Source of the DNA: Pocillopora damicornis
Taxonomy: Eukaryota
NCBI RefSeq assembly: GCF_003704095.1
Contig: NW_020846501.1
Location: 434,001 to 498,000 of the forward strand
DNA length: 64,000 nt
Reading direction: 5' to 3'
The notes below the pieces were generated by a model. That model made no database searches. It was not told where the DNA came from and saw only the letters and a list, made by a program, of their open reading frames with translations. A program made the position numbers and the translations under genes. The stretch's first letter is position 1; every line of letters starts with the position of its first letter. Shown one piece after another: positions 28,101 to 56,600 of this stretch.

Positions 28101-31100
28101 GAACTGAATTTGTTGAGAACGAAGAGAGAGGAAGTTATGCTTATCTCATTTACGGTGCCACATCAGAGGATCAGGGCACCTATCGTTGCACGGCGGTAAA
28201 TGAGGCCGGCCGTGTGTCGTGCGAAGGACAACTGACGGTGAGAGAAAACGTCACTCCTCCCAGGTTTCTCCAGCGCCTCGAAGACAACTCAGTTGTGGAG
28301 GGAGGTGCTGTTGACTTGGAGGTTGAGGTCAGTGGGAGACCAAGACCAGCTTTGAAGTGGCTGAAAGATGGGAGCATTGTTGTTCCAGATGATCGTTTTA
28401 AAATAGACACAGAAGGCCGTATTCATACATTGCAGATAACTCAATGTATGCTTTCAGATGGAGGGAAATACACTTGTACTGCTTCTAACAGTGGCGGCAC
28501 GGATACTTGCTCTGCTAATCTGCAAGTCGAAAAAGAGATGCACGCCCCAGAATTTGTTGTTCGACCTGAAGGAGCACACATTGTCGAGGGAAGCCAAGCC
28601 AGATTTGAGGCAGTTGTTTCTGGTCTACCAGAACCCGAAATTGAGTGGTTCAAAGATGGAAAACTTGTACGAAACAGTCACCGCTTTGAACTGGAGTTCG
28701 ACAGAAATCGATCCGCTCTTACTGTGAAGGGAGCAAAACAAACAGATGACGGAGAATTCACGTGTACAGCTACCAACCAAGTTGGGAAGGTTTCTTGCTC
28801 TATAGAACTTGTTGTTGACGAGGCAGTTGTTGCACCTGAATTTGTCAAGAAAATGACAAATATAGAGTTATGTGAGGGTGACTTGGCACGATTTGACGTT
28901 CGGGTGTCTGGCACACCTCAACCAGACATAAAATGGTTGAAGAATGACGAGTCTTTGCGAGGGGAATCACGATACGAATTTCTCTCCGATGATGACATGC
29001 ATTCCTTGGAGTTGTCTAATTGCCTGTTATCTGATGCTGGAACATACCGCTGTACCGCCTCAAATGAGGCAGGAGAAACGTCTTGCACTGGCGAACTCAC
29101 TGTTGCAGAAAAGCTGTCCCCTCCAGTGTTTACGGATGAGCCCTATTTTCCAAGTTTGATTGAAGCTGGAGGTGACATTGTGCTAGAGGCGATGGTTAGT
29201 GGTAAGCCTACACCAACTGTGGAGTGGGTCAAAGATGATACAGCTCTTAAGAACAGCAGTCAATTTAACATAAAGGCCAAAGATGACAAACATACCCTAA
29301 CTATTTCTAGTGCTAGCCCTGCTGATTCTGGAGCTTATAAGTGCATCGCACATAATACTGGTGGAACGTCCACAAGGACTTTCAACGTTAACATTGAAGG
29401 TAAGGATGTTTGTTTCAATGTTTATCTTTTGTAGCAGCTTCCATGTACATGTAGCACAGATATTTCACTGTGCTATGTCATCCTCAGATTAATTTGTGTA
29501 TTTTAACATGCATTGCTCTAACTGGTGATGGCAGAAGCGTGTGAGACCAGATACGTTTGTAATCATTTCGAGTCGGACAATACATAAAAATATTGACCAA
29601 TCATATGGCTCTTTAGTGGCTCCTATGACTTGAACTGTTTTTTAAACAATGTGCTCTGTGGTAGATGTTAAATGTCGGAGAAGCTTGCAACAGTTTGCTT
29701 TTACATGAATTACACTTCGTTAGTGAGCTGCAATCAGCATACCAAAAACGCTCTAGTTCGGGTATTTAAGAGGCTGCTTCGTAAAATGATATCAACTGAC
29801 ATAAGGTTCTCTATGTAACATTGTAAGAGCAGTGGTAGACCAACAAAGGCCCAAGCAAATAGAATAGAGTTTAATTCTGTAAAATACTTCTTAACCTTAT
29901 CATTAGTAATCCTGCCCAGCTTTCTCAGCTATTGGCTTCAAGGTGGCTTTTATTTGTAAGCATCTGAGGAACGACCTAGCACTATAAAATTATTTAAGTG
30001 TATCAGCATACTTTACATATATTGTCGGTTAAAAGCATAATTATATCGCTCAACCATTGCTCTGTGTGTACTTTGTAATTGTTATCAATCAAAGGCACCT
30101 CCCTCACCTCAACTAATGCTTTTTATTCTGCTAACTGTACTTTGTACATTCTGCCTTGGTGCAGTGTTTCTTCCTCACTTGTCGTCTGTGGACGAGCTAT
30201 GGCTTTGTTGAAGTCGGTCTTTGTGTAGGCTAACTGGCCTCTTCCAAATCTTGTAACACGTTTGATTCTGCTTATCATACGTCGTTCATACCTCTGTCGT
30301 GACGTCTCGCAGACGAGCTTCTAGATACAGACGGTCTACCTTTACGGAAATGTGAAGAAACAATCCCTTTTTTATTGCATAGCCTCAAAGCCGCACGGAA
30401 CTGCGCCCACGTTTACAAAGTTGTTGGTGTCACCAACAGCCATTGAGAACTCTCCAGTTACTCTGGAGTGCGAAGTCGTTGGTTCTCCTGAAATATTCAT
30501 CGAGTGGATCAAAGGCGATTGTCGAGTTAGGCAAACGACACGTGTTCGTACCGAATTTGATGGGAAAAACTGCCGTCTAATATTCTTACGCACAGAGCTC
30601 GATGATGAAGCAGATTACAAGTGTATTGCTAGAAATGCGTTTGGCACTGCATCTACAGATTGTGAAGTGCTAGTGGAGGAAGATCTCAGTCAACATCATA
30701 GTCCACCTTTTTTCAAAAAGAAGCCACACAACCAAACGATATCAGAAGGTCAACATGCAACGTTCAGTGCTATTATCGGAGGAACCCCAGAACCCGAAGT
30801 CGATTGGTTTAAGGATGAAAAAGCGATTGAAGATAAAGGGAGATTTGTTATTAGAGACGATCTTGACAAGGGAAAGTTTTCCCTAACTATTGAAGAAACC
30901 TTTGTTGAGGATGCCGGCATATACAAGTGTGTTGCCTTTAATGAAGTTGGAGAGGAGTCATACGAGGCAAGATTAAGTATTATTCCCCTTGGAAATAAAA
31001 GTGAACCCACCTTTGAGGTGCCTTTTGAAGTCTCCGTTAATGCAGAGTCGGCCACACCCCTGAGCTTTTCCAACCAGCCAAAGTTTGTGGTAACATCAGG

Positions 31101-34100
31101 AGAACCAGGTGCAACTAAGGATCAACCTCGACCCACGAAAGAGAAGCTTACAGCTTCAAGAAAGACCGCAGACTTTGATCTTGAACCTCCGCACTTTATT
31201 GCCTTGCCGGAAGGTCTCAGTCCTTTTGAAGTGAACGCAGATGAAGATGTCACTCTGCAAGTGAGAGTAAGAGGTAAACCTCTCCCGGAGGTAAAGTGGC
31301 TGAAAGATGAGAAGCCCCTGGTAGAAACAAGCAAATTCCTATGGAACAATGACACAGATATATATACGTTAGTGATCTGTGGACCTACACCAAGAGATAA
31401 AGGAACTTACGTCTGTTTAGCATCAAATAGTGCTGGAACTGCCACGAGAAGTTTTGAAGTGAACATAGAAGGCTATGAAGACTGGGTTATGCCTTCATTT
31501 CAGGAACATACAGCAAACCCCTTTGTAATATCAGATGATGGCGATGTGACCATGGACGTTAGAGTAGCGGGGAATCCTTCACCAAGCGTTGAGTGGAGAA
31601 AAGATGGTCAACCCATATTGGAAAATGAACGGGTTAAATTGTTTTCTTCAGAAGACGTTCACAGACTTTTTATCAAAGGAGCTTCGCCAGAAGACGAAGG
31701 GAATTACATTTGCACGGCAACTAACCCAGCTGGAAAGTCGACCAGAACATACACTCTAGACATTGGTGGTGTTGGGCCTGAAGAGGTCAGAAGTCGCCAG
31801 GAAGTTGTAGACGAAACATTAGTGCCTCCCAGAATTGTAAAACAGACAGAGCTAGAGACACCAATAAGTATTTCTGAGGATGGTGATGTTAAACTGGAGG
31901 TTATGTTCAATGGAACCCCAGACGAAGAGTGGACAAAGGATGGAATAGTCATACAGGAAAGTAACCATTTTCAGATAAACTCAGAAGTTGGAGTGCAGAA
32001 TCTTGTTATTAAGGGTGCCACTCAGGAGGACAAAGGAGTATACAAATGCATGCCTTCTAATAAAGCTGGCTCCTCGTGGAAAACATTTTCAGTTGATTGT
32101 AAAGAAGCGGAGAACGTTCACCCAGAACAACCTTCGGGACTGGAAAGGCCTTCTTTTGTTGAAGATGACAATGTCGTTCCTTTTCAACTGACTGTCGATG
32201 GAGATGTTAAGCTTGCAGCAAGAGTTCAGGGTAGCCCCACACCACAAGTTGAGTGGGATAAGGATGATGTTCCTCTACAAAACAGCGAGCATATTGTTAT
32301 TACTTCTAAAGATGACCTTTACTCCTTACTGATTTCAAATCCAACTATCTCTGACAAAGGAAAGTACACTCTTACTGCCACAAATGAAGCTGGAGTTGGT
32401 ACACGTGCTTTCGATGTTAAAATTAAAGGTAGCTCTTTATCTTGAAGTTATAAAGTGAGAGGTTTCCTTTTGTAATCTTTTTTAATTTCTCTAGTTTAGA
32501 CATTTCTCATTTTCTTGCTGGCAGATGAAAGTTTCTCCAAGTAATAAATTGGATCCTTTTAACTGGTCTTAGTTTAGTCGCGATTTTGGTTTTCTCGTAC
32601 GGATTTGCCACGTTGTTCGCTAGTAGACAAACATTAGAAAGAGAATGATACTCCTCTGACCATCGGGGTGCCTCCACAGATAGTACTTTCTCGAATTCTT
32701 ATTAAATGCATTGATCAGTTGTTTAATTTTTCCAGTTTCCCCCAAATCCATCATCTGGAATTCTTGGTAAAGTTTGATTTACAAAAAGATGAACTTGATA
32801 CAATTTGTTCGCCCAAGGGAACCATATGGTTGATATGCTTTTCAAGCTTTATAGCTGCTTATTGCAGTCGTCTAAAATTTAATTGCAGTTATCGATGAAA
32901 CATGTTTAACTCGTAATGATTTTGTGTCATTATTACAATATGCTTTTTCTTCACCAGATAGACAGTTGATCTTATTTTTCTTAGCCACTAATTTGCTGAA
33001 TAAATTGAATTATAATGAATGTTGATCAACGTACATGTCACAGGTGCAAAGCCAATTAGTTCGACGCCAGAAATCACCAAGGAACTTGATGAGGTAGAGG
33101 TACTTCAAGGACAACCAATCACTTTGGAGTGTCATGTCTCTGGAGCTTCTGATGCTCACGTGAAGTGGTTTCATGACAATGTTCTTCTGACTGACAATGA
33201 GCGAATAACCACCTCATTCGATGGTGTGGTTTGTGTCCTGACAATCCAACGCTCAATTCTAGATGATGAAGGGGACTATCTGTGTCAGATAGAGAATGAC
33301 CAAGGTGTCGTGTCAAGTTCTTCTGAAGTGATAGTGGACGAAGGAATGGCGTTACCAATTTTCAAAGAGCCACTGAAAAACACAAGCATTACCGAAGGCG
33401 AGAATGTCTGCTTTGATATCCGTGTTGTAGGAAACCCAGAACCAGTCGTGGAATGGTTTAAAGATGGTGTACAGCTTGAAGATGAGGGCCGTATTATGAT
33501 AATTGATGACGTGGATGATGATCAGCCAGAACTCTTCTCTCTTGTAATCGAAAAGTGTGAACAATCAGATGTTGGTCTGTACAAATGTATAGCTATGAAC
33601 GAAGCTGGCAAAGATTCGTGTAGTGCTCAACTGCAAGTCACCTCTTCATCAGTTGCACAGAAGAGTCCAGATATTGCTAAGATTCCTGTGGATGTCACAG
33701 AGGGCCAAGACGTAACACTGAAGGCTTTGACCAGTGCACAACTTCCCAAAGTCATTTGGCTTAAGGATGATGAACCTTTGATGCAGAGTACCCACTATGA
33801 TATTGATGCTAAACAAGGCATCCATACTCTGACAATAAGAAATGCCTTACCTGAGGACTCTGGGATTTACAAGTTTGATACTAATGATGATAGCACCAGT
33901 ATCTTCAAGGTCACCATTAAAGGTAATACTAGCAAATTTGATTTTCAAAGAGAAAATCTTGCGTATGAAAAATTGTGGAAGGCGGTTATGTGCCTCATTA
34001 GATACACGAAAAATGCACTGCGTCGGTGCTCGCTATCAGTTAGTTTTGCAATCATACTTTTTTTTAATAGTTCCACTAATAATTTCCTTACTTTCACTAA

Positions 34101-37100
34101 AATATTTGCGGAAGCTATGTTTACTTGAATGTTTTTCTAAATTTGTTGAAGAGTGTTTTCACGTAATTATGGTATTTATTGAGGCGAGGTTTGGATAGAG
34201 TTGCTTGATGATAAGGGTAATTTTTTAGTCAATAAATTGGGTGTGGTAAATGAATATCGGACAGTGTCCCATTTAAACCTCTTACCTCTCTCATTAAATC
34301 TCATCTTAATTTATCTTGAAGGGAAAGATTCTTTAGATGGCGTCGCACCGGAGGTCACAACAGTAAATAGTCCTGTGGAAGTACTTGAGGGAAGTACAGC
34401 CAAACTGACTTGTGTGGTCACTGGAACACCATATCCAAAAGTTACTTGGCTAATAGATGGTAGTCCTGTTGAGACAAGTGAGCGTGTCATTTTCGACTAC
34501 GATGGAGAGTTCTCATCACTTCTCTTCCTAAGCACTGAGCTGGATGACGAAGGAGAGTATCAGTGTAAAGCACAGAACGAGATTGGATCAGCAATCAGCA
34601 CTATGGAACTTCTGGTAAATGAACTCAGTGACCTTGAAGATCAGAGTAAACCAGCGTTTTCAGAGAAATTGAAAGAGGTCAGCACATTTGAAGGTGATAC
34701 TGCAGTCTTTAGCGTAAAGGTTCAAGGCTTTCCACTTCCTGACGTTCAGTGGTACTCGTCTGAACGGGAAATTTTAAAAAATGAGCGGTTTGTTACAGAT
34801 TCAGCTGTAGATGGTCGCCACACGCTCACTATCAATGACTGTGTAACTAAAGACAAAGGGAGATACAAATGTGTTGCATCCAATGTAGTTGGGAAGGCTG
34901 TGTGTTCAGCTGGGTTGACAGTTAAGGAAAAGTTAATCCCACCCCAATTTTCAGACCAAGATAGTGGAGCTCCGATGTTGATTGATGAAGGAAGCGATGT
35001 TATGCTGCAAGTTGAAGTAACTGGAAAGCCAAAGCCGTCCACTAAGTGGTACAAAGACGACCAACCAATTAGTCGAACCAGTAGCAAGTACAAGACTGAT
35101 GTTCTAGGAGAGAGGCAGTCTCTCAATATTGTCGCTGCAACACCAGAAGACTCTGGAATTTATCAGTGTAGAGCTACCAGCCCGTCTGGGACAATAACGA
35201 GAACCTTCGATGTTAATATAAAAGGTTAGTTTTCGAGTCTGAAACATTTGTTTTCCATATTTCAGCCGCAGAGAATGACCGAAAAATAAATGTCAGTTTT
35301 TCATAAATTGTTCTGAGCGAGAGGTTTGGGTTGTCGCCATCGTTTCTGTGATTTGTTTGGAGTAGCACTCTGTGGTTTGATCCTTTTTATTTTTTTCTTT
35401 TTTCGAAATTTAAAACTTCGAAGTATAAAATACAGTCATGATAGTCCACCTTGTTCATTGAGGTGGGTCTTTCTCCTCGAGTTTTTTCGTTTAAAAGTAT
35501 ATCTCATAGTGAGCAAGAGACACCAACTTGTGAATAGAAGTATTTCCTTACTCATTACATGAACAGCAAAACAACCGGAGGGTGAGTCTCCCAAGTTCAT
35601 TCAGCCCTTAAAGTCCAAGAAGGTGTTCGAAGGTAGTGCCGCAAAGCTTGAGGTCAGGATATCGGGTGAGCCAGAGCCGAAAGTGGAGTGGTTTAAAGAT
35701 GAACAACCAATAGAAGAAGGTGGCAACTTCAGAATTGAATTTGACGACACTGATGGCTGTACGCTCGTCATCAATTCTACCAAGACGAGTCATGAAGGTC
35801 TGTACAAGTGCGTGGCTTCAAATTCATTTGGAAAAGCTAACTCTGAGGCAGAGTTGCTGGTTACAGGTTTGTATTTATCTTGAGGCTAGTCGTAATGAAA
35901 GGTGAAGTATTCTTTTGTGGGAGTGTGAGAGGAAGGATTGGTCAGAATTTGTGACAGGAATGTAAATGTTCATGCCCAGCATAATACGTGAGCCTGTAAA
36001 TGTTGGTGTTTGGAACGACATTCTTTCATTTCATTCATAAGATAGTTCGTAAATTCGTAGAATTTAATTAATTGGGCGGGCTTACTTTATATTTCCACTA
36101 CCAGGCTAACGACATGTTTGAACGCATGGACGTGTTCGCTATTCAACAAGTGCGATGAAAATTTGGTTAAAATTATTATTACATGCGTCAGCTTTGCGTT
36201 GATCGAAGCACTTAGGACGTTTGGAGAGCAACAAGCTTGAGTTTGCTCACGGCTGCACTTCTAGCGAGTCTTCAACATACTTGGTGCTCTCCGAAGTTCG
36301 CGCGTGCTACATGTTTTAATTGACGCATGTTGACGTAGAGCCATTTGTTCATTAGAGTCATTCTTGTATACGGTTCTTTTCTTCTGTAGGAGACGATGAA
36401 AATAAAGTGGAGTCCCCAGAAAACTTAGTAACGGTGGAAAAAAGTGTACCGATAAGTTCAGTACCTTTTGGACCAGTGGAAGTTGCACTCCCAGTTAAAG
36501 AGGAGAGCCTTCCTTCAACCTACAAGGAGAAACGTGAAGTGTCAGAGAAGGAGCTTCCACAAAGTAGACCTTCTTTTGAAGCTGTTCAGGTATCCTAAAA
36601 TTTCTATTTGCGTAGAGACTATCAGTCAAATACAAGAGCGTTGAAATAAGCAGTGCTATTTGTTAGTGTCTTGGGACTCAGAACTTAGGCTCAAACTGCA
36701 GTCAATGTATTGTTTCAATGTTTCATTACAATCACCTTTCGGGTAAAAAAAGGATAGGAGCGCAAAGTATGTCAATTGAGTACGATATGGGATTGGCTTG
36801 CTAACGTTTCAAACATCTGGATGTGGCGGAAACCCTTATAAGATCTCTGTGTTTGGGTTTTGTATTCTTTTATGGACTAAGAAGATTTTAATTATTGTAT
36901 CTCTGTCAATTCATTTTTGTAGCTTGTTTTACCTGGACCAGGAGATGTGCCTTTGATACCAGACACTATTTCAGCCTTGGAATACGAGCCAGTTCAACTG
37001 ACACTGCCGGGTGCGAATGAACCCATTCTGCCTGACTTTATGGATGTTCCTAATGACTTAAAGGTAAATGAAGGCGCCAAGGTGGTTCTCAAAGTGAGGG

Positions 37101-40100
37101 TAATTGGACAACCTGTGCCTGAAGTTACATGGTTTGTAGATGACGAGCCAGTGCAACCAAGTGACAATATTTCTATTCGTTCTGATGGAGATAAGCATGA
37201 GCTTATTATTCATGAGGCAGAAGTGGATGATGAAGGGATGTACAAATGTGTAGCAAAAAGTGAGGCAGGAAAAGCTATCTGCGAAGTGGAATTGCTCGTA
37301 GAAGGTAATTTTTGTAGACTCTTAGAGACCAGCCTTCGGGTTTCGAAGGATGGATAACGCTACAACCGTTTGCCTTTTGAATAAACCTTTATCCGTTGGA
37401 TAAGATAGTACGTGGGATAGCGTTATCTGCTATTTTAACAACTGGGCGTAGGCGACATCAGTTGGAATAAAGCCTGTGGAAAATTGATGTCATTGAAAAA
37501 CACATCAAGTAGCGAAGTTGGAAGCTTTTTGGATCTCAAATCTGAACCAGTTATCTTTCCTCATGGTATTTCGCATGTAACAATTTTTTTCCATAGAACG
37601 TTTTTAAGCGTTTAAGAGTTATGTTGTAAGTTAGCGTTTATTACGACGCATCAGATCCATTGGTACTCATGAAGTTTTTTTGTAACAAATGAAAAATGTT
37701 TAGTAGAGTGTCTTCTAACTACATTTACAGAAGCAAGAAAGCCAAAAACAGAGGAATCCCTTGAAGTTCAAATCACAAAGGAGCTGGAGGACGTTGAAGT
37801 TGATGAAGGAGAACCAGCAACTTTGGAGATCTGTTTTGTGAGTCGAGACAAACCAGCTGTGTCCTGGTTCAAGGGAATGAAGCCTGTAGAACCGAACAAG
37901 AGAGTCAAAATTATAACAGATGAGCAAAGCAGTAAGCTGATTATCAAGAAGACCGTCGGTGAAGATGAGGGACTTTACAAGTGTTCAGTTAAAAGTGGGA
38001 CTTGGGAAATGAATTCCTCTGCAGAACTTATAGTGGAAGGTTTGTGAATTAGGCAAACTCAAGTAAATAAGCACTTTGGTCTTAACGATACAATTTGACC
38101 TGGTAACACGTGCATTGTTGACTTAACGCAATATGATCGTTTACAGTACTTTAGATGAGCTGTTTCTCGATATTGAACTCTCACAACCACCAAATTCAGT
38201 ACCGGTACCGTATGAGTGCTGTTTGAAGTACAGATTAATTTTTGTTTGTTTTAAATTACTCGATGATTTTTTTAAAAACTCTCTATTTCATTTCAGAACC
38301 AAGTGACGACGAAAAAGTGATGTAAGTAATTTCACGTATTGTTTTTATATTATCATAGACATAGACGGAACCAGAACCTGATAAGAAGTTGAGACAAATT
38401 TTATCATTACCTTTTAAACTTAATTACTCCACATTGTTTACAACGTTCAGGATCCGAAAGGCATTTTATTTGAAAATGAACGTTCATTATTGTTTTGATC
38501 AGACTCAGGAAGCCTGTTCTGGTTCAAAAATTTTCTGATGGGGACATTGTGGAGGGGGAAAAGCTTGAACTGCAGATCAAAGTGATTGGCTCCAAACCTG
38601 TCACTGTCACGTGGTACAGAGACGATGAAAAGATAGAAGCAGACGATCACTGCAAATTACTCTCAGACGACGAGATTCATGTGCTCAGAGTAAACCAAGC
38701 AGAAATCGACGACGAGGCCATATACAAGTGTGTAGTGAAGAATCCTGCAGGACAAGATCAGTGTGAGGCACAAATCCTGGTTGAAGGTACTGCAGTGTTT
38801 TTACCATATGATGTTTTTGCTCAGGACCGAAAGAATTTTTTTCACCATTTGCAACTTGATTTCTCTATTTGCAGAAAAGACTGATTCTGTGGAATTTGTT
38901 GATGCAGAGTTCAGTGGTATGTGATGTTCGAAATTTTAGAAACGACCAATGAAACGAAGTTCAACGTTCAAGTTGCAGCGGGTGTTTTACTCTAAAAAAT
39001 ACTCTTTGGTCTTTAGAACTATCGTTGTTGTAAATTCTTAACATGACCATGGTGGTGACTAAGTCATCAACGTGCAACGTCTGCAAACAAATATATTAAA
39101 CGAAACAACAAAAAAAAAACAAGCAGGTTTCATGTACCCTTGGTAGTGGGCCGAGCAAATCGGCCGAGAAAAATGACTTCAGAGCAACATGAGAAACTTT
39201 GACTGAAGTAAGCCATTCAGTTAGCTATTTACAAGCGTGCGCTTTAACTCGAACGTTGTCCTTCCGGCTTCTCTTTCTCTTTCTCGAAACCGTTTTGACT
39301 TAGGCGATCTTTGACTTTCCGAATTTTTTTTTTCACTCAGAAAACGCTCCTCATTTCATCTCACGTTTGCCAGAAGAGATAGAGGTTCTTGAAGGTGACT
39401 TAACACGGCTTGAATGTCGAATAGGACTTGCGGCAGAAGTTTCCTGGTTTAAAGATGACGAACCTTTGGAGGAGGACGATCGCATCACCATTGAAAACGA
39501 GGGTGATGCTTCTGCAGTTGTCATCTCCTGTACAGAATTAGACGATGAAGGTGACTACAAATGTGTAGTGCAAAACGAGTTTGGTAGAGCCATGTGTCAG
39601 ACTGAGGTAATTGTGGAAGAAGGTGTTAGTATGCCACTGATTAAGGAGTCGCTGAAGAACCTTGAGGCCAATGAAGGTGATGTGGTTAAGTTTGAGGTTC
39701 GTATCACAGGTAACCCTGAACCGGTGGTGGAATGGTTCAAGAACGGGAGTCAGTTGCAAGACGAGGGACGTGTGATCATTGTTGACGATGCTGATGACAA
39801 TGACGAAGAGCTCTTTTGTCTCGTCATTGAGGATTGTAAAGTTGGTGATTCTGGGACGTACAAGGTCGTGGCAATGAGTGAGGCTGGAACTGCCAATTGT
39901 GAGTGCAGCCTGAATGTTACTCGTACTCAGGTTCCGCCGGAGTTCAAAGATGAAATGGAAGAGGTAGGAGCATTTTATTCAAATGTGCCATCGTTTTTTC
40001 GAATTATAGATATCCTTCATGGGTAACGCACTATCTTTAGCTCGAAGTAAAAGCAGATGGTACAGCAGGTACGAAAATTATTTAAACGTCGATCAGTTAG

Positions 40101-41609
40101 CCACCTTAGACTTGTGAAAAGAAATATTAAAATGGTGTGCTGAAAGCAGTCCTCTCCTTCCCCTCAGTCTGGGCTATTGCCCTGACAGTCCCACTGGGGT
40201 CATGGGTTTATGTTATTTTTGGTCCATATCCGGTTATCCTTGATAACCTCTATGGCAGAAGGGGATTTGCTCATGCTCCGTTTACCTTTGGTTATTTATT
40301 TCTTTTCAAACATTCGTGCTCAATTTTCATTTGTGTTACTGCCAGGTGCCTATGGAAGGCTCTCAAGGCGACAATGTGTCTATGGTTGTGAATACTGGTC
40401 GGTTACCCTCACCAGTAATTGCATGGTTCAAGGACGAAGAGCCAGTCGTGTCCAGTTCTCATCTTGAGATCTCACATGACCCCGATCACTCTAAGCTAAT
40501 GGTTCATCATGTCACCCCAGAAGACTCCGGTACTTACAAGTGTGTTGCAACTAGTGTAATGGGTACAATTACCAAGAAGTTTCTTCTTAATATAGAAGGT
40601 AACGTGATCTTTCTCTAACGTTCTAGCAAGTATTGATCAGTTAGCGAGCATATTTATTTGGTTTATAAAATCGGCATTCCTAAATGAACCCTCTTGAGCA
40701 AAGACAATAAAATACTGACATTGGTCGCCAAGAGAGTGCTTTTCGTTCGATGTAGGAATCAGTAAATTTCTGTAACTGCCTCGAGGGACTGCATCGCGTT
40801 TTTCTTTGCGCTCAATTTTTCTTCTCTCCGCAATTCTGATTTTTCCTCATGAGATGAAGATATTTATTGTTGTTCTGTTTATGGTTCTGGACGTTTTTTT
40901 TTTGTTATAAATGATTGTAAAGTGTGTGCTTTTTCTCGTCACTCAGGATCAGAACCTAAATTAGAACAGACAATAAGTACTTCCGACTTGCAAGCAGAAC
41001 CTGTAAGAGATGTTGCCGCACCGGTGTTCCTAAAAAAGATGGATGCTGTTGTAATTAATGCTGGAGAGGAGGCCCGATTTGATGTTAGAGTTTCTGGCGT
41101 TCCAGAACCTAAAGTTGTATGGTATCGGGGGTCAAATGAGGTGAAAGATGAAGGACGATTTGTGCACATTGATGCCATTGAAGAAGATCTGTTCACATTG
41201 GTTATTGAAAGCAGTGAATCAGGAGATGCTGGTCAATACAAGTGCGTTGCTTCCAACGAAGCTGGTCAAACGTCATGTGAAGCTCAGTTGATTGTACGCG
41301 AAAAGGAAGTTGACAAAAAACCTCTCAATGAAAATGTTCAAGGTACAAAAACTAATACTGTCGAGGACTTAAAATTTGGACACGCCTACTATACTAAGTT
41401 GCATCCAGTTAGAAGAATCACTCATCTGACTCTTTTTGGAGTTGATTCAGACTCAGTGCTGCTTTGGGATTAAAGGTTACACCCTTACATTAGTTATATG
41501 CATTGTGGCGTGTCCAGTAGAGCAGTTAAATGTATTTCCTATTTCGAATACAAGGGAATTACTTACTAGTGTGTTAATAATCATCTGTCTGTCTATGAAC
41601 TGAAATAAA

Positions 41610-41654
<45 letters not shown>

Positions 41655-47600: not shown

Positions 47601-50600
47601 TGCGTGGCTCGTAACGAGCTCGGCAGTGCGTCAAGCGAAGCAGAGCTTCTGGTGGAAGAAGCTGAAACCAAACCAGACTTTAAAGAAGAGCTGAAGAATA
47701 TCAGTGTCTTGCCAAGGGCCGAAGCCAGGTTTGATGTGCGTGTTGTGGGTGTACCGCCACCAGAAGTTGACTGGTTTAAGGGAAAACAAAAGATCGAAGA
47801 TGAGGGTCGCTTTATTTTGATTGATGACGAAGAGGACGACCTGTTTTCTTTAGTGATTGAAGAGGCAAGGCCAAGTGACAGCGGTGAATATGAGTGTGTT
47901 GCATTCAATGAAGTCGGTGAAGTTTCATGTAAAAGTAAATTAATTGTTGGAGAAACGCTGATCCCACGAGAAGAGGCTGAAAGTGCGCTGCCTGCGGTTG
48001 AAGAATCCATCACTGTACCCGAGTCAGCTGCCAAGGTCGAGAGCGCTCTTGTTATGGAACAGGAAGGAGGGGATGTGAAAGGTAGTCAAGAAAAAAACAG
48101 CATTTTGACAGTATGTTCGTGTGTGTTGCTTTCATTTAAAGGTAGCCCTTCCAAACCATCAGTGAATATTCTACAGTGTGAGGTTAATTTATCTGAAATG
48201 TTGCGCATGTGGATTGGAGGTCCTTTCGTGTAGTCTCACCATTGCAATACATCTACTGTTTCTGTGAAGATCCATTTGAAAAAAGGAGACAACCCATCGG
48301 AAGGCTTTGTTCCCAAAGACACTTTTGAAAGGGAAATAGCTACCTTTTAACGCCTTACTCGTTTCTTTTAAACATTTAGCATCTGCTAATTATCTGCATG
48401 TATTTACTGTTGTTATTTTTCTTGGTTTTTCTTCATACGTGCATTCCGTTGTAGTGGTAGGCTTCTTTTATTCTTTCCATTAACGCGTGAGTATCATTCT
48501 TAAAACCGTCGTTCACATCAATGAAGGGATCTTTTGTAATTTTGCTGGTCCTCTTTACTATTTTTGTTGCTTTAAAATGTAGCTAAGAAACCAGGAGGAA
48601 AAGCACCGGTATTTTCTGAATCTCTTCAATCCGTGGAGGTAAAGGAAGGAAGTGATGCCAAACTACAGTGCACTGTGACTGCTGAACCCAAACCTAACAT
48701 CGAGTGGTTTAAAAAGGGAGTGCGGATGAAGGAAAACAGACGGGTCAAGTTTGAAAGTGATAGTGACTCCTTTGCTGTAACAATTAGGGATGCCAGATCT
48801 TTTGATGAAGGAGAATACAAGTGCGTGGCTACCAATGAGATTGACTCAGCATCCTGTGCGGCCACTCTAACAGTGCGAGTCGTAGCTAAGCCAGAATTCA
48901 AGGACAAACTCAAAAGAGTCGAAGTGATGGAAGGAGACTCTGCGCAATTTGATACTCGAGTAGTTGGTTACCCTGTGCCTGAGCTACAGTGGTTTAAAGG
49001 GATTAGTAAGCTGAAGAGCGAAGGTCGAATTGAGTTTAAAGAGAATTCTGAAGACAATATGTTTTCACTTGAAATCCGTGATACCCAGCGTGACGATGCT
49101 GGGATGTACAAGTGTGAAGCCTCAAACGAAGGGGGTAAGGTGTTTTTTTTTTTTCGTTATGTGCAGCTTTAAAATTTTGCGCACATCTGTGCGCGTCTGT
49201 CTAAAATCAGTCTTAACGAGTGATTGGCGTCAGAGATTCCGCGCATTTGTCCTGGTAACGGAGATGTATGCTTTGTTATGTATGCACTTACATCTGTAAT
49301 CGCGCGCTTTTTTATGAATGATTGTCGACCAATATAGACCCGTTAATTTGCTAATAGTTACTTAGGGCGAAGTCATATAAAAGAGATTTAACGCTTATTC
49401 TTCTGACCCAGGTAAAACCACATGCCGAGCGGACCTCATAGTAAAGGAGAGGCTTTTCGCCCCCGAAATTTCAGGAGACCAATCTGAGGCTCCCCTTACT
49501 GTGACTGAAGGCGGAGAAGTTAGTTTGGATGTCACAATCAACGGAAAACCAAAACCTGACGTGAAATGGTATAAAGATGACAAACCCCTTCGCGAGAGTA
49601 CCAGACTAGACATTAGAGCACGTGGAGATAAACACTCTGTGGTGATTCTTGGCATCAGGGCGGATGACTCCGGTGTTTACAAGTGTGAAGCTAAGAGTAA
49701 GATGGGAACTGCCACCAGAACGTTTGATGTCAGGGTACAAGGTAGGACTCTTTTAACCACAATGACGTAATTTTTCCGACTGTAATTGAACGTTGTTTGA
49801 ACCTTTTAGGTGAAACTTCTTTTAAACAAGAGATACTTCCCTCCACAGCTCTCTCTTTTTAACGCACTTCTTATTTCTGAAGTGGAAGAATTTTCAAATG
49901 TGATTTTGGTGTATGCGTTTTTAGAGTTTTATGATTTTGAGAGAAGCTAGAGTCTCTTCTTCACAATGATAAGGCGCACTAAAATCGTCACTTAAACATT
50001 GTAGGCTGGCTATGTAGACGAGTTCTAACCCAAACCGCGGTTTTACACAAGTAGTGAGCCTTACATATTCTCTATAAAGAGAGTTGTTTTCATTAAATGA
50101 TTGTCCTTCCAACGCTAGTTTTGGGCCTTCTTGACAACGTGCACAGTTTAGGACGCGGTTTTTTTAAAATACGGCTAAACTTTTTTTTTTTTTAAATAAC
50201 CGGCCTTGTATTTCACTTTAGCACCAGCCTCTGAATTTTTACTGCGACAAACAATTCAAAATAGGACCTGCAGGAATGTCAGACGTTTGTGGCCCATTCA
50301 ATGTTTATTGTTTCATGATATTATAATCACTACATTGTGATATATACTTCAGTAATTACTATATTTTTGTTTACACCCTCAGCTGAGAGGCCTAAAGGAA
50401 GTGCCCCAGAGTTTACCTTTCCTTTGCAATCAGTTGAAGCATCCGAAGGGACCAAAGTGAAACTTTCCTGTACTCTGAAGGGGACTCCGCAACCAACCAT
50501 CCAGTGGCTTAAAGATGGAGAACCATTAGAGACCAACAAAGGAGTTACAGCTGACTTTGATGGAGAACTTGCTTCTTTGTCATTTAGTGCAGCGGAACTT

Positions 50601-53600
50601 GACGATGAGGGTGATTACAAATGTATTGCTCAAAATGAGCTGGGTGCTGCATCCTGCTCTGCAGAACTTCTCGTAAACGAAGCTGATAGTAAACCAGAAT
50701 TTACCGAAGCTATGAAGGACATCGAAGTAGCTGAAAACAAAGAAGGAAGGTTTGATGTGCGTGTAACAGGATATCCTAAACCAGCTGTGCAATGGCTTAA
50801 AGGAGCTGACAAGATCGAAGATGCTGGAAAATATATTTTAATTGACGATGAGGAAGATGATCTCTTCTCTCTTGTAATTGACGATGTTTCCCCAGATGAA
50901 GCCGGTACTTACACCTGCAAAGTAACTAATAACGTTGGAGAGGCCGTCTGCGAAGCTGAACTTAAACTAAAGGAGAGTATAGCGGCCCCTGAATTTGCTG
51001 ACGAGGAGGAGACAGGCCCAATCACAGCAGTTGAAGGTGGCGAGGTGACATTGTCTGTTGCCGTAAAAGGCAAACCTCGTCCTGATGTCGAGTGGTTCAA
51101 AAATGATAAGCCACTGAAAAAAACAAGTCGTCTGGACGTAAGATCCCGAGACGACAAGTTCTCTTTAGTTGTTATGAATGTCTCACCAGAGGACTCTGGC
51201 CTTTACAAGTGTGTGGCTAGCAGCAGGGTTGGACGCGTTATTAGAACATTCCAAGTGAATATCGAAGGTAAGATATTTCTTTTTTCGCAGTACTATGATG
51301 TAAATACTTTTTCAGAGCTGGAGAGAATTTTAAACACGGTGTAAGGGAATAAGAAATCACTGAAAATGACATACATGGCTTTCTCTGGGTGGGGGGGGGG
51401 GGGGNNNNNNNNNNNNNNNNNNNNNNNNNNNNNNNNNNNNNNNNNNNNNNNNNNNNNNNNNNNNNNNNNNNNNNNNNNNNNNNNNNNNNNNNNNNNNNNN
51501 NNNNNNNNNNNNNNNNNNNNNNNNNNNNNNNNNNNNNNNNNNNNNNNNNNNNNNNNNNNNNNNNNNNNNNNNNNNNNNNCACCACAAGTTACACAGCCTT
51601 TAAAAGCAACGCAGATTGTAGAGGGAAATCCTGTAAGACTGAAATGTCGCATGACTGGATCACCAGAACCCACGGCAGAGTGGTTAAAAAATGGAGAACA
51701 AGTCGAACTTAGTCAAAGGATCAAAGCTGATGTAATAGGCGATATGTGTCAATTGTCCTTCGCTGAAACGCAAGAAGACGATAGTGGATCTTACAAATGT
51801 GTCATTATAAACGATCTAGGGTCGACTTTTTCAGAAGCAGAACTTGTCGTGACCATACCAATTGTAGCACCCAAATTTAAGGAAAAGCTAAAAGGTTTAC
51901 AGGTGAATGAAGGCGAACAAGTTCAGCTTGATGTACGGGTTAGCGGAAATCCTACACCGAACGTTTCTTGGTTCCGTGGACCTCAAGCTATCATTAACGA
52001 AGGGCGATTTATTGTTAAAGCAGACGACGGGGATGAATTATATTCTCTAATAATTGATGAAACAACTTTAGATGACAGTGGTACTTACAAATGTGTTGCG
52101 TCTAACGAGGCAGGAAAAGCCACATGTCGTGGGGAATTAGAAGTTAATGAAAAGCTTACGGCTCCAGAATTTGCAGGCGTGTTCAGTGACGCTCCAGTTA
52201 TCTTCAGAGAAGGGGAAGAAGTTTCGATGGAAGTTACAATACGAGGAAAACCTGCTCCTGACGTTGAGTGGTATAAAGATGAACTTAGTGTCAGAAAGTC
52301 ATCAAATATGACCACCCTGGTCAAAGGAGAGAAACAAACACTTCTCATTTACAACGCCAAGCCAGCTGATTCTGGAGTGTATAAATGTGTGGCAAAGAGT
52401 AACATGGGAACAGCAATGCGGACGTTTAACATCACCGTAGAAGGTTAGCTAATTTCAGATAAAAATGAGTTATACAAACATAGGGCCCATCTTATATTTC
52501 TTTATCTACTGTGAAGGACTCAAAACTAGTTAAGTCATCCTTTGAGCCCATATTTTTTTAAGGCGATGGTGGTAAACGCTACAATTCTTGTATCACCAAC
52601 TCCAAACCTGTGGAAAAAGAAACATCTCTCAACCTCAATATTCCTAACTCTTTCCTTTTTCTTAACTAGCCAAAAAACCCAAAGGCTCAGCGCCGGAGTT
52701 TTTCAAGCCTCTAAAGAAAATAGAAGTTGTTGAAGGCAGTAGTGCTAAATTAGAGGGCTGGGTTCATGGAAAGCCAGAACCAAGTATCGAATGGTACAAA
52801 GACGATGAACTTGTCACATCTAATAGACGAGTGAAAACCTACTTCGACTCGGAAGTTTGCAGACTGACAATTTCTGATACTGTTGCTGATGACGAAGGGG
52901 AATATAAATGTGTAGCAACCAATGAACTTGGCAGTGTGTCGTGCTCCGCAGAGCTGCTTGTAAATGAAGCTATTATAATACCAGAGTTTGAGGAGAAATT
53001 GAAGCACACTGAAGTTATTGAGGGTGATACCGCGCGATTTGATGTCTGCGTGGTTGGCAATCCTAAGCCTGTTACCGAATGGTCAAAGGGTGGAAAAGCT
53101 ATCGTCAGTGGAGGAAGGTTTAAAATTGTGTATTCTGAGGACAGCAATGTACATTCCTTATTTATTGAGAATGTGTCATTAGATGACTTCGGAAGCTATA
53201 AATGCGTTGCGTCTAACGAAGCTGGAAGAATGCAATGTTCTGCACGGCTTGATGTAAAAGAGAGACAGATTGCGCCAGAGTTCTCCGATGAATACGGTGA
53301 TTCACCAATAGAAGTTAAGGAAGGCGATGAACTTAAGATAAACGTGACAATTCGGGGGAATCCAAGTCCAGACGCAGAATGGTTTAAAGATGACAAGCCA
53401 TTTAAAAGAACAAGTCGCGGAAATATATCAGCGCGAGGAAATAAATTTGGTATCACAATCTTCACTGTTACTCCCGAGGACTCTGGAGTATATAAATGTG
53501 TTGCGAAGAGTGCTGCAGGTACAACGACTAAAACCTTCCAGGTTGATATCGAAGGTAAGTAAATGTGCGTGGTACTGCATGGAGTGTGACGCTATTTATA

Positions 53601-56600
53601 TCATTCACACAACAATGTAAGTTGTTTTGTAGAACTCATTACTGTTATCCATCCGTGGTAGGTTTGTGGCAAAGTCTTCTGCAGAATTTTTCTGGATTTT
53701 TCTTGGTTATGTTAATTTTGTTTTTTTAATCGAAGTGTTTATGTCTTCTACAGGCAAGAAACCTGCACCCAGATTCACTCAACCGTTGGAAGAGACTCAA
53801 GCTACCATCGGAGGGACAGCGAGACTGAAATGTCGCCTAAATGCCACAGCCAAACCTAATATTGAATGGAAAAAGAATGGTCAACCTGTTAGTGAAAACC
53901 GACGGGTGAAAACAGAGTTGGAGGGTGAACTCATCTCACTGGTCATCTCGGACGCTAGGTTTGAAGATAGCGGAGAATACCAGTGTGTTGTTAAGAATAA
54001 GAGTGGAACTGCGTCTTGTAGTACGCGTCTTTTTGTGAGCGAATCGACGAGTAAACCAGAGTTCAAAAAAGTGATGAATGATCTGGAATTACTAGAAGGA
54101 GATGACGCCGTTTTTGAGATTGCAGTTAATGCCAAGCCCGACCCCAAGGTGCAATGGTTCTTGAGAAAAATGCCCATCAAGAGTGAAGGAAAGTACACCA
54201 TCGATGAAGACTCAGAGCGGCAGAGGTTTTCACTCACTATAAGCGATTGCCACACAGAGGACAGTGGTCAGTATCGGTGCCTTGTAACAAACAGCGCTGG
54301 TGAAGTCGCGAGTTCAGCTGAGCTCAAAGTCAGTGATAGACAAGTGGCACCCAGATTTATTCAAGGCACAGAGGAGCAGCTGTTTGAGGTTTGGGAAGGA
54401 GCTCCTGTCAAGCTTGTGGTGCAAGCCAGAGGGAAGCCCACCCCTCAAGTGGAATGGTTTAAGGAGAATCGCCTGGCTCGGAGAGTCAAGCGAGTTGAGC
54501 TGGAGACCGAAGATGACCAGAGCATTCTGTTGATTCCCAAGGCAGTCCCAGATGATTCAGGGAATTACCGAGTTGAAGCCACGAACTCCGCTGGAACAGC
54601 TGTCAAACCATTTGTTGTTAAAGTCAATGGTAGGCTTAAAATTCAAGTATTTGTCAAACATTACTTTAAAAAAAAAACACTAGAAAAGTCAAGATAAGTT
54701 ATTAGGGCTGTCAAATAATAAAACTTGGTAATTAGAGTATCATATTTTTAAAGAAAAATTGCCACAACTTAGCGGAGATTTTTTGATATGTGACACTGAG
54801 GTAAGGAATGTTCTTATAACAGCCTTCCATTAGTTGGATACTTTTTGCTCATAATTCCTTACACAGAAGCCAGACTCTAAGACAACAGAGGTTGAGTCTT
54901 TAAAGCGAATTAAATGAGTGTTATTCTGGTTCACAGCTCAAAAGCTTGTTCTTAGACGAGAACCAGTTCCTGCCGGAGCTGTAAAACCAGAATTCATTCA
55001 GCGACTTCAGGACGTTGAGATCGTTGAAGGGAGTGCTGCTAAGTTTGATGTCCGTGTCAAAGGTAAGATTAATTCTAATCCTCTATTGAATTTAGTCAGC
55101 CTTATTCCTTGAATATTTCCTGATATTGCGGCAACTGTAGTGCTTGTAATCTCAACAATTTGATCATTTCATTTTAAATAAGAAATAATACCAAAGGCGA
55201 TAATGTAACTGAACGCACACCACACAAAACAAAAAATAACTCAGTCACAGTTAAATGGGAGTGGGGGAATTAATTGGCCTTTGTTTTGGTTGTTATGATA
55301 TCTTGTCGATATTATGGTTTCCGTCTATTCAGGGACACCCGAGCCGGAGGTGGACTGGTACAAAGACAACCGTGTGATACGTGAAGGCGGTCGAATGAGA
55401 TTCTTGTTTGAAGACGACGGTTTGTGTTCACTGCTCATAAGAGAGGCTGAATCATCTGACCGAGGGCGTTACAAGTGCGTGGCGAGTAATCCAGCCGGCA
55501 AAGTTCAGTGCAGTGCAGAACTATTCATAGAGAGTAAGTATCTAATTTTCTTGTTAAACGCTGTCATTAACTTTGTTTTTTGTGATAGAAATCAAGCAAC
55601 ACGGTGTTTTTTTTGTTTGTTTGTTTGTTTTTTTGTAATGTTACCATAAGCTTGTTGTTTCACTAAAATTGTTACTTTCTCTTTCGTGCACAGGCCATGG
55701 TTTTGATTCTACCAGTGGCTCTGATCACGAGAGACGTCTTTCACGGTGAGTTACGATCACTCAATAAGCACACAGCAAATATTATTAAAAAGATTGTTCA
55801 GTTGGCAAATGAATCCTATGCTTCGCGAGGGAGACATACTTGTGTAATATATTTTTTAACATGAGCTTCCCATTTTGTTTCGAGAAAGGACATGTTTAAT
55901 CCAGGATTGAATATCTTACGACTTATATAAATTGTTTATTTTTTCTTTTGTCAGAGAGTCAACTTTTGATATGCTGTCGGACGACACAGAAGATGAAGTT
56001 GAATCATCCTCCTCAAGTGGTCCACCTAAGCTTCCTCCAGACATAACGCTTGTGTTACGCAACCGTGACGTGAAGGAGGGTGGCGTGACAAAGTTTGCTT
56101 GTCGAGTGGTTAGCAGTAGTAGCGTGACTGCTGAGTGGTACAAAGATGATCAGCTTGTCAATAAATGGCCCCGCTTCACTTGTGAACGTGATGAGGATCT
56201 TTATGCTTTGAACATCACAGACGCCAAGAGGACAGATGCAGGACACATTCGATTTGTGGCACGGAACGAGTTTGGTCAGGTTGAGAGCAATGCATACCTC
56301 AATGTTGAACGTGAGTAGCACCAATTTGGGAATTTTATGATAATTTGGTTCTAAAGGTCAACTCAAGGTGGTGGCACCTTATGCTCTTCGTTTGGTCATG
56401 GGCTGATAATTTTTTTTTTGACAATTTTATCGTTTGGTAATGAATTCGGTTAAGCGGTGTGTTCGTGTGGTGATCTGAGAATTTTTTGGCCCTATTTCAG
56501 CTGACATGGAACCTGAATTCGAAGGAAACACACCAAGGTTTATTCAGAAACTTAAAGATGTTGATGCAGTGCCCGGTAAAACGGCGAGACTGGAGTGCCG

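What the first reader, a model, noticed from the sequence alone, without database searches (positions are those of the whole stretch)
28530..54629. Three-Ig A-B-C super-repeat encoded as interchangeable ~885-nt phase-1 cassette exons
Seen: about 13-15 units with a fixed order. A has PL..VEV.EG..A.L.C...FDGE...LDDEGEYKC; B has FDV.V.G.P.P...EDEGRF.IIDDE..DLFSL; C has GKP.P.VEWYKDDKPL..TSR...DSGVYKC...TRTF.V.IEG. Most units are single exons of 876-903 nt, all phase 1-1. Known: titin has higher-order super-repeats and its length is tuned by exon skipping. Inference: this is an independently evolved super-repeat. Any cassette can be skipped in frame, so filament length could be adjusted in three-domain steps, and the period may match a partner filament.
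Basis: partly seen in the sequence, partly recalled or inferred. Interest (0 to 1): 0.75.

Follow-up and report, generated by a model that had tools for sequence, protein, structure and literature searches.

The report
Three-Ig super-repeat in coral titin-family gene
A giant coral cytoskeletal gene of the titin-ancestor type carries about fifteen old, individually conserved copies of a three-immunoglobulin-domain block, mostly one block per exon, and the transcript assemblies examined join the blocks in order with no skipping seen.

Summary
My own Ig profile finds 75 I-set domains on the + strand. Between 28535 and 54629 they form about 15 A-B-C units. Domain identity is 42-50% at lags 3, 6, 9 and 12, against 27-34% at other lags. 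Tree clades hold 14/14 C, 14/15 B and 12/15 A domains. Nine units are single predicted exons of 879-903 nt in phase 1-1. RNA contigs from four studies confirm five GT-AG junctions.

Exceptions: one exon is A-B-C-C-C-C, one unit lacks C, two units carry an internal intron, there is one orphan B exon, and four non-ABC Ig exons interrupt the array.

The assembly gap hides the acceptor and first ~21-23 nt of one unit, so continuity there is untested.

The gene runs spectrin repeats, RhoGEF, SH3, about 78 Ig, then three kinase regions. That matches the cnidarian "connectitin" described in 2025.

The units are old (35-67% identical). Nine have their own orthologues in other assemblies, so they are not interchangeable. 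No cassette-skipping junction was seen, although contigs cannot exclude rare isoforms.

The closest analogue is titin's 6-Ig and 10-Ig I-band super-repeats. I rate it a new variant of a known kind, of moderate interest.

The parts
28535..29399 (+). U0: A-B-C unit formed by the last three Ig domains of the giant multi-Ig exon (open frame 24980-29431; donor after 29399)
   Evidence: Matches unit profile positions 4-294 at E 2.7e-93. Its B and C domains fall in the B and C clades; its A domain is unresolved. Donor aag|GTAAGG is in phase 1 (predicted).
30383..32428 (+). U1 exon: A, B, a 72-aa linker, then four C-type Ig domains (2046 nt)
   Evidence: Pfam finds 6 I-set stretches. Domains d18-d21 are all in the C clade. 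Linker length. Splice sites are predicted.
33044..33922 (+). U2: single-exon A-B-C unit, 879 nt
   Evidence: splice sites predicted.
34322..35224 (+). U3: single-exon A-B-C unit, 903 nt. Its B domain is atypical and falls outside the B clade.
   Evidence: It has its own orthologue clade of 3 rows with support 100.
35567..38786 (+). Four single-Ig exons of no A, B or C class that interrupt the array (about 35567-35866, 36942-37304, 37731-38039 and ~38503-38786)
   Evidence: Domains d28-d31 lie outside the three clades. Splice sites are predicted. No phase-1 acceptor was found for the last exon.
39341..40598 (+). U4: A-B exon 39341-39963 and C exon 40262-40598, with a predicted phase-0 intron between them
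   Evidence: not checked with RNA.
40953..41342 (+). Orphan B-type Ig exon (390 nt)
   Evidence: Domain d35 sits inside the B clade. Its mean identity is 43% to B, 31% to A and 26% to C.
42029..42910 (+). U6: single-exon unit, 882 nt
   Evidence: Orthologue clade of 16 rows with support 100. AlphaFold2 model with pLDDT 94.4.
43318..44202 (+). U7: single-exon unit, 885 nt
   Evidence: Donor 44202 is confirmed by RNA contigs in 4 of 4 runs. Orthologue clade of 35 rows with support 95.
44707..45606 (+). U8: single-exon unit, 900 nt
   Evidence: Both ends are confirmed by RNA contigs in 4 of 4 runs. Orthologue clade of 12 rows with support 99.
46034..46915 (+). U9: single-exon unit, 882 nt
   Evidence: Both ends are confirmed by RNA contigs. 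Orthologue clade of 13 rows with support 99. 67% identical to U11.
47362..48081 (+). U10: A-B plus a 44-aa tail, with no C domain (720 nt)
   Evidence: Both ends are confirmed by RNA contigs. No C remnant is found in the following intron.
48583..49741 (+). U11: exons 48583-49134 and 49412-49741, separated by a 277-nt phase-1 intron inside the B domain
   Evidence: The joint 49134>49412 is GT..AG in 4 of 4 runs. Sequence shown. The 49741 donor is predicted.
50383..51267 (+). U12: single-exon unit, 885 nt
   Evidence: Orthologue clade of 15 rows with support 100. Splice sites predicted.
51405..51579 (.). Assembly gap (175 N). It covers the 3' part of the U12-U13 intron plus the acceptor and first ~21-23 nt of the U13 exon.
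   Evidence: Not filled and not looked up.
51580..52443 (+). U13: A-B-C unit whose 5' end lies in the gap
   Evidence: Matches profile positions 6-294. Donor aag|GTTAGC is in phase 1. Orthologue clade of 5 rows with support 100.
52670..53554 (+). U14: single-exon unit, 885 nt
   Evidence: Orthologue clade of 9 rows with support 100. Splice sites predicted.
53736..54629 (+). U15: the last and most divergent unit, 894 nt (876 nt if the acceptor is at 53754)
   Evidence: Orthologue clade of 8 rows with support 100. Splice sites predicted.

Best explanation
The region is the central rod of one giant + strand gene. Its layout is spectrin repeats, a RhoGEF piece, SH3, about 78 I-set Ig domains, and three kinase regions downstream. 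This is the architecture published in 2025 for cnidarian 'connectitin', the Trio/kalirin-derived ancestor type of titin.

Shown here:
- A three-Ig block (A-B-C, about 294 aa) was copied in tandem about 15 times.
- Most copies were made as one phase-1/phase-1 exon together with its intron. At least one event was a two-unit copy: U9 and U10 gave U11 and U12.
- The copies are ancient and each is kept as its own orthologue in other assemblies.
- In the transcript assemblies examined, the five junctions laid (U7 to U11) join consecutive units.

Inferred:
- The protein segment is a fixed, segmented rod. The model gives a stiff A-B pair (5-6 residue linker, pLDDT 97-98), a softer hinge before C (pLDDT 71), and a 9-10 residue Pro/Gly-containing link to the next unit.
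- That gives a regular pattern of stiff segments and hinges every three domains. It would work like the 'carpenter's ruler' spring proposed for titin's I-band Ig super-repeats.
- In-frame skipping is possible in principle but is not the main mode seen.
For: - Period-3 identity and the three domain clades.
- Full-length unit matches occur only at this locus: 11 full-length matches, and 30 of the 31 matches lie on this contig.
- Exon lengths and phases.
- Five GT-AG joints in 4 of 4 RNA runs from 4 studies, and a 16.6-kb RNA contig through the region.
- RNA runs hold 0.64-0.66 of the sampled words of 42000-48000, where predicted exons make up 0.70.
- Units are 30-67% identical in protein and 57-65% in DNA, 80% at most.
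- Nine units each sit in an orthologue clade with support 95-100.
- 97 of 120 listed hits cover the whole unit in one 272-454-aa open frame.
- Hits share contig lengths with orthologues of the giant exon.
- AlphaFold2 model: pLDDT 94.4, pTM 0.71, with the low point at the B-C linker.
- The best structural and sequence matches are titin I67-I69 and I65-I70.
- Gene architecture, compared with PMC12198301 (passages).
- The carpenter's-ruler model as summarised in PMC3859903 (passages).
Against: - Only five junctions were checked with RNA. All other splice sites are predictions.
- Contigs cannot show rare isoforms, tissue-specific forms, or the level of expression.
- Rigidity and hinges come from a predicted model of one unit.
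- Period-3 conservation could be nothing more than duplication history.
- One-transcript continuity from the spectrin repeats to the kinases was not shown.
- The organisms behind the orthologous proteins are unknown, so the age of the array is expressed only as percent identity.
- The gap could hide more sequence.
Confidence: 0.72

Rival explanations
1. One reading: the units are interchangeable cassette exons, and filament length is tuned in three-domain steps by exon skipping, as in titin's I-band.
For: All whole units are multiples of 3 nt with phase-1 ends, so skipping keeps the frame. Titin's middle-Ig super-repeats are spliced out in heart (PMC12241362, passages). Contigs cannot exclude minor isoforms (tool note).
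Against: - No GT-AG joint skips a unit in 4 of 4 RNA runs. Only the five consecutive joints appear.
- The other joints listed are non-canonical, have 21-49-nt sides, and do not lie at exon ends.
- Units are diverged from one another and each is conserved as its own orthologue, which argues against interchangeability.
- Phase 1-1 is the usual phase of Ig-domain exons (textbook knowledge), so it is not a special adaptation.
Confidence: 0.15
2. The three-domain period is a molecular ruler. Each A-B-C unit is matched to an axial repeat of a partner filament, such as the ~14.3-nm myosin/paramyosin stagger, and A, B and C each make a position-specific contact.
For: - Class-specific conservation persists across about 15 old copies: 40-42% within a class against 28-33% between classes.
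- Linkers are regular: A>B is 5-6 aa in 12 of 15 units, and B>C is 6-8 aa in 11 of 14.
- Charge is consistent by class: mean net charge A -7, B -8, C -2.
- Titin A-band super-repeats do act this way (PMC3859903, passages).
- A length of about 4.4 nm per Ig is recalled, not computed here.
Against: - No partner was tested.
- The array is interrupted by four other Ig exons, an orphan B, extra C domains and a unit without C. A strict ruler should not tolerate these.
- The period may simply reflect block duplication.
Confidence: 0.12
3. The Ig array belongs to a separate extracellular adhesion gene of hemicentin or IgCAM type, not to the spectrin/RhoGEF/kinase gene.
For: Databases name distant matches hemicentin-like or titin-like. 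PDB sequence matches include DSCAM, Robo and contactins.
Against: - All parts lie on the same strand and in one uninterrupted exon series from the spectrin repeats to the Ig domains.
- A 16.6-kb RNA contig reaches 14.2 kb of mRNA upstream of 43600.
- The top structural and sequence matches are titin I-band Ig domains.
- Signal peptide and transmembrane segments were not looked for.
- The architecture equals published connectitin (PMC12198301, passages).
Confidence: 0.03
4. Assembly artefact: the repeats were created by mis-assembly.
For: There is an N gap inside the array.
Against: Units differ by 35-43% in DNA. Independent RNA contigs match at 99% or more across the junctions. Orthologous units exist in other assemblies.
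Confidence: 0.01

Closest known systems
Titin/connectin I-band middle-Ig segment: 6-Ig and 10-Ig super-repeats (PMC12241362, passages; Gautel 1996, seen only as a cited reference)
   Same: - All-Ig (I-set) tandem array whose domains group by position within a repeated block.
- Grown by block duplication.
- Exons are symmetrical, so blocks can be removed in frame.
- The best sequence and fold matches of the coral unit are titin I65-I70 and I67-I69.
   Different: - The block is 3 domains, not 6 or 10.
- One whole block per exon here, against one domain per exon in titin.
- No differential splicing was seen here.
- The copies are much older: 30-67% identity between units.
Cnidarian connectitin (Hanashima et al. 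2025, PMC12198301, passages)
   Same: Spectrin repeats at the N-terminal side, RhoGEF and SH3, numerous Ig domains, and three kinase regions as stated for coral and sea anemone.
   Different: The paper's main text mentions 'super-repeat' once, and only for human titin. The variants 'super repeat', 'superrepeat' and 'tandem Ig' occur 0 times. No PH domain was found here, and SEC14 was only faintly detected. The paper's figures and supplements were not seen.
Obscurin / UNC-89
   Same: A giant RhoGEF + SH3 + tandem-Ig + C-terminal kinase protein. A 2026 review says this organisation first appears in Cnidaria (PMC12812942, passages).
   Different: [quoted passage not shown] PMC12198301 states that OBSCN is absent in cnidarians, so the naming in print conflicts. 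N-terminal spectrin repeats are not part of obscurin.
Titin A-band 7- and 11-domain super-repeats
   Same: Position-specific conservation within a repeated multi-domain block. The A-band repeats are thought to match the thick-filament period (PMC3859903, passages).
   Different: They are built of Ig plus Fn3 domains. No Fn3 was seen in the coral array, and no partner period has been shown.

Membership tests
Ig super-repeat of titin-family rods | Tandem I-set Ig domains | tested here: met
   PF07679 at E 6.5e-79 with 3 stretches per unit. 75 domains found with my own profile.
Ig super-repeat of titin-family rods | Domains are more alike at the repeat distance than to their neighbours, and group by position in a tree | tested here: met
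   Lags 3, 6, 9 and 12 give 42-50% identity against 27-34% elsewhere. Clades hold 14/14 C, 14/15 B and 12/15 A. AU tests are not rejecting.
Ig super-repeat of titin-family rods | One domain per exon (titin middle-Ig segment, obscurin) | tested here: not met
   Three domains per exon in 9 units, and 6 to about 15 domains in two other exons.
Ig super-repeat of titin-family rods | Blocks removed by alternative splicing | tested here: inconclusive
   No skipping joint in contigs of 4 RNA runs, but contigs do not show rare forms.
Cnidarian connectitin (PMC12198301) | SEC14 domain at the N-terminus | tested here: inconclusive
   One exon piece 0.6-0.8 kb upstream of the window matches CRAL_TRIO_2 at E 0.079, below the cut-off.
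Cnidarian connectitin (PMC12198301) | Many spectrin repeats | tested here: met
   Spectrin_7, DUF7799 and Spectrin hits on two of the exon pieces tested. The number of repeats was not counted here.
Cnidarian connectitin (PMC12198301) | RhoGEF, PH and SH3 domains | tested here: inconclusive
   RhoGEF PF00621 at E 2.6e-4 on one 51-aa exon, below the cut-off. The SH3 at 22.3 kb is weak (E 0.05-0.09). A clear SH3_1 lies downstream (E 1.3e-5). No PH domain was found.
Cnidarian connectitin (PMC12198301) | Three kinase domains in coral | tested here: met
   - Pkinase hits at window-continued 75.7-76.4 kb (E 8.9e-12 and 3.8e-11).
- Pkinase hits at 88.0-88.7 kb (E 1.1e-8).
- A third kinase-like region at 96.2-97.1 kb, with a weak PDB match to titin/twitchin kinase (E 7.6e-4).
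- From. That they lie on the same transcript was not shown.
Obscurin / UNC-89 | RhoGEF plus tandem Ig plus two C-terminal kinases, without spectrin repeats | tested here: not met
   Spectrin repeats precede the RhoGEF, and three kinase regions follow. Orthology of the kinases was not tested.

The most novel reading that the evidence does not exclude
In an animal lineage without a conventional titin, the titin-ancestor gene already carries a true structural ruler. The A-B-C unit would be one step of a periodic scaffold laid along a myosin/paramyosin or other filament, with A, B and C each holding a fixed contact. Super-repeat-based filament measuring would then predate bilaterian titin rather than being a bilaterian invention.
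Probability: 0.1. Interest if true: 0.8.

Novelty: new variant of a known kind. Interest (0 to 1): 0.45.

Why it matters
Ig super-repeats have been the hallmark of vertebrate titin. Human obscurin was reported to have none (PMC2196875, passages). Cnidarian connectitin was described only in 2025, at the level of domain cartoons.

An old, regular and orthologously conserved three-Ig block in the coral gene has three consequences:
- Higher-order periodicity arose in this gene family outside Bilateria.
- It offers a compact one-exon unit for structural and mechanical study.
- It provides a concrete test of whether giant Ig rods in non-bilaterian muscle act as springs, rulers or both.

It also corrects the expectation that such exon arrays must be splicing cassettes.

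Tried and rejected
Searches and tests that gave little or were left unfinished:
- The whole-library profile search with the unit alignment. Its top 150 are giant generic Ig proteins ranked by summed, overlapping domain scores. My class-specific HMMs found no multi-unit A-B-C array among the 150: 2 of 150 (P0049, P0140) end in a single a-b-C run, and P0008 ends in a U0-like full-length unit match. This says nothing about absence, because single-unit proteins score below the cut of the list.
- The search with the giant exon. It gave 23 unnamed orthologue clusters at 45-99% identity, and otherwise only generic titin-, hemicentin- and DSCAM-named hits at 35% identity or less. No named orthologue was found in the permitted length range.
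- Pfam on single small exons of the DH, SH3 and SEC14 regions mostly fell below the thresholds.
- The AU test for the 14 C domains did not finish and was not repeated.
- PMC3398149 (Steinmetz 2012) is not held. What I say of it comes from two reviews.
- A search for a C-domain remnant after U10 found none.
- A genome search with the U11 intron found only itself.
- Findings look-ups by words gave nothing useful for this question.

Ideas I rejected:
- The odd joints (44963>46267, 44968>48803, 46288>46739, 46759>47723 and the 'goes back' rows) as splicing. They are not GT-AG, their sides are 21-49 nt, and they do not lie at exon ends.
- The 49581>46756 joint as real. It is the U11 C domain running past the end of the laid stretch onto its 80%-identical paralogue in U9.

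Caveats on the domain set:
- d51 carries 8 residues and d34 several residues translated from intron sequence, because domains were extended to profile length within the open frame.
- The two longest end branches in the tree are d24 and d34.

Limits of sources:
- Supplements and figures of the papers were not seen. They may hold domain maps of Acropora or Nematostella connectitin that bear on novelty.
- The organisms behind the unnamed proteins were not looked up.

Full report
WHAT IS THERE.

The + strand of the window carries one long series of open exon-sized frames. Pfam calls three I-set Ig domains in each of two test exons and six in the 30325-32442 frame. It calls Trio/kalirin-type spectrin repeats in upstream frames. 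A profile built from the window's own domains finds 76 Ig hits. I kept 75 of them as domains, from 23637 to 62912.

THE SUPER-REPEAT IS REAL.

I labelled domains A, B or C purely by their position in the claimed units and built a tree of all 75.
- All 14 C domains fall in one clade, together with three extra domains of exon 30383-32428 (SH-aLRT 99).
- 14 of 15 B domains fall in one clade with the lone Ig of exon 40953-41342 (98).
- 12 of 15 A domains fall in a weakly supported clade (82).
- The labels were as clustered in 0 of 500 shuffles.
- Trees forcing all 15 A or all 15 B together are not rejected (p-AU 0.82 and 0.80). They in fact scored better than the quick free search.
- The test for C did not finish.

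Independently of any tree, identity between domains peaks at 42-50% at lags 3, 6, 9 and 12. It is 27-34% at all other lags in the two uninterrupted runs. The Ig runs before and after the array show no period. 43 of 44 labelled domains have their nearest neighbour in their own class.

Ten whole units align end to end at 35-57% identity to U6. In the whole 234-Mb assembly, matches to the full 294-position unit profile occur only here: 11 full-length matches, and 30 of the 31 matches at E<=1e-20 lie on this contig.

EXONS.

Splice-site inspection gives whole-unit exons of 879, 903, 882, 885, 900, 882, 885, 885 and 894 (or 876) nt. All are divisible by three, starting and ending in phase 1.

I laid RNA-seq contigs of four runs from four studies on 43600-49599. 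All four show the GT..AG joints 44202>44707, 45606>46034, 46915>47362, 48081>48583 and 49134>49412. This verifies both ends of U8, U9 and U10, the donor of U7, and the first exon of U11 with its internal intron. All other splice sites remain predictions.

The RNA runs hold 0.64-0.66 of the sampled words of 42000-48000, where predicted exons make up 0.70.

- U0 is the tail of a ~4.3-kb exon.
- U1 is A-B-72 aa-C-C-C-C.
- U4 has a predicted phase-0 intron between B and C.
- U10 has lost C. No remnant is found.
- U11 has a phase-1 intron inside B.
- An orphan B exon and four unclassed single-Ig exons interrupt the array.

THE GAP.

N runs from 51405 to 51579. On the left, the U12 donor at 51267 is followed by intron sequence ending in a poly-G run. 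On the right, sequence resumes two bases before the first codon of the U13 A domain. In eight other units the exon starts 20-23 nt before that codon. The acceptor and the first ~21-23 nt of U13 are therefore unread.

Frame across the gap is not a meaningful question, because the left side is intron. Continuity, and whether anything more is hidden, could not be tested.

WHICH GENE.

Upstream are spectrin repeats, one exon with a sub-threshold RhoGEF match (E 2.6e-4) and a weak SH3. A faint CRAL/TRIO match lies just before the window.

Downstream of the window there are two more SH3-like exons, three Ig domains and three kinase-like regions. The best solved relatives of the kinase regions are DAPK, twitchin, MLCK, titin and obscurin kinases.

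This is the architecture that Hanashima et al. 2025 give for cnidarian 'connectitin', with three kinases in coral and sea anemone. They regard it as a Trio/kalirin paralogue and the ancestor type of SESTD1-CCDC141-titin (PMC12198301, passages).

Two reviews instead speak of cnidarian obscurin/UNC-89 orthologues (PMC12812942 and PMC5253434, passages). The naming in print conflicts, and I did not resolve it.

One RNA contig of 16.6 kb reaches 14.2 kb of mRNA upstream of 43600. That length is compatible with inclusion of the upstream Ig exons, but I could not lay that part.

AGE AND CONSERVATION.

Units are 30-67% identical in protein and 57-65% in DNA, with one 80% stretch. They are therefore old copies. 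U9/U11 (67%) and U10/U12 (54%) point to a two-unit block duplication.

A profile search limited to unit-sized proteins found 208 hits at E<=1e-40 among 8000 scored. The 120 listed are all unnamed and 272-454 aa long. 97 of the 120 cover the whole unit in one open frame.

In a tree of 11 window units and 109 of these hits, U3, U6, U7, U8, U9, U12, U13, U14 and U15 each sit in their own clade with support 95-100. The clade sizes are 3, 16, 35, 12, 13, 15, 5, 9 and 8. U0, U2 and two hits stand alone.

Several hits share the same longest-contig length with each other and with orthologues of the giant exon at 54-82% identity. I take this to mean that several units sit on one contig in other assemblies. 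That is an inference.

So the array predates the divergence of these unnamed lineages. Each unit keeps its own identity, and the one-unit-one-open-frame layout recurs elsewhere.

HOW IT PROBABLY WORKS.

An AlphaFold2 model of U6 with an 80-row alignment is confident (pLDDT 94.4, pTM 0.71). pLDDT is 97-98 through the A-B junction and dips to 71 at the B-C linker.

Linkers are regular. A>B is 5-6 residues in 12 of 15 units, and B>C is 6-8 in 11 of 14. A and B are acidic and C is near neutral, with mean net charges of -7, -8 and -2.

The best fold and sequence matches are titin I67-I69 and I65-I70. That fragment is the basis of the 'carpenter's ruler' model of stiff segments and hinges (PMC3859903, passages).

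My reading is a fixed segmented rod or spring with a three-domain period. That step is inference.

No GT-AG joint that skips a unit was present. The other joints listed there are non-canonical, short-sided and off the exon ends. Contigs cannot exclude rare or tissue-specific isoforms.

COMPARISON AND NOVELTY.

The nearest known thing is titin's middle-Ig segment, with 6-Ig and 10-Ig super-repeats, one Ig per exon, spliced out in heart (PMC12241362, passages). Human obscurin was reported to have no super-repeat (PMC2196875, passages).

In the connectitin paper's main text, 'super-repeat' occurs once, for human titin. The variants I tried occur 0 times. Full-text searches for a cnidarian or obscurin Ig super-repeat listed no paper that describes one (listings and passages only). 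Figures and supplements were not seen.

I rate this a new variant of a known kind.

Noticed in passing
window 49135-49411: A 277-nt intron sits inside the B domain of U11, and RNA contigs of 4 of 4 runs splice it out. The paralogue U9 (67% identical) has no intron there. The intron is flanked by the same 5 nt (GGTAA) on both sides and is single-copy in the assembly. It is a candidate for a lineage-specific intron gain.
   Followed up: partly
window 47975: Contigs of two RNA runs (X9, X11) carry an in-frame 9-nt insertion in the tail of U10, while two others (X1, X4) match the window. This is probably allelic or between-population variation in the linker left after C was lost.
   Followed up: no
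window 47949-48081: After its B domain, the U10 exon ends in a 44-aa acidic tail whose last residues resemble the start of a C domain. The rest of C is gone, and no remnant is found in the next intron.
   Followed up: yes
window 38032-38513: Between the single-Ig exons d30 and d31 I found no phase-1 acceptor. The candidates fit a phase-2 intron (donor 38043, acceptor 38503 or 38509). If so, not every Ig exon within the finding's range is phase 1-1. Not checked with RNA.
   Followed up: no
window 51388-51404: The assembly gap begins right after a run of about 17 G interrupted by one T. The homopolymer probably caused the break.
   Followed up: no
L006 6580-9902 (0.1-3.4 kb upstream of the window start): Exon-sized frames with a possible start (the frame at L006 6580-6768 holds a methionine followed by open sequence), a faint CRAL/TRIO match (E 0.079) and a spectrin-like piece. 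This is probably the 5' end of the same giant gene. An unrelated large open frame lies at L006 62-3497.
   Followed up: partly
L001-L005 (window-continued 64.4-97.1 kb): Downstream there are two SH3-like exons, three more Ig domains and three kinase-like regions. The last two have an unusual catalytic-loop wording, already noted by the scan. There is also a serine/glutamine-rich low-complexity open frame at ~100.4-101.2 kb and a 100-N stretch somewhere within these five loci.
   Followed up: partly
window 24980-29431: The giant exon encoding about 15 Ig domains in one open frame is conserved as a single 1337-1496-aa open frame in 23 unnamed protein clusters at 45-99% identity. The absence of introns between these Ig domains is therefore old.
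   Followed up: partly
literature: Print sources disagree on what the cnidarian gene is. Two reviews call it an obscurin/UNC-89 orthologue, while the 2025 connectitin paper says OBSCN is absent from cnidarians.
   Followed up: no
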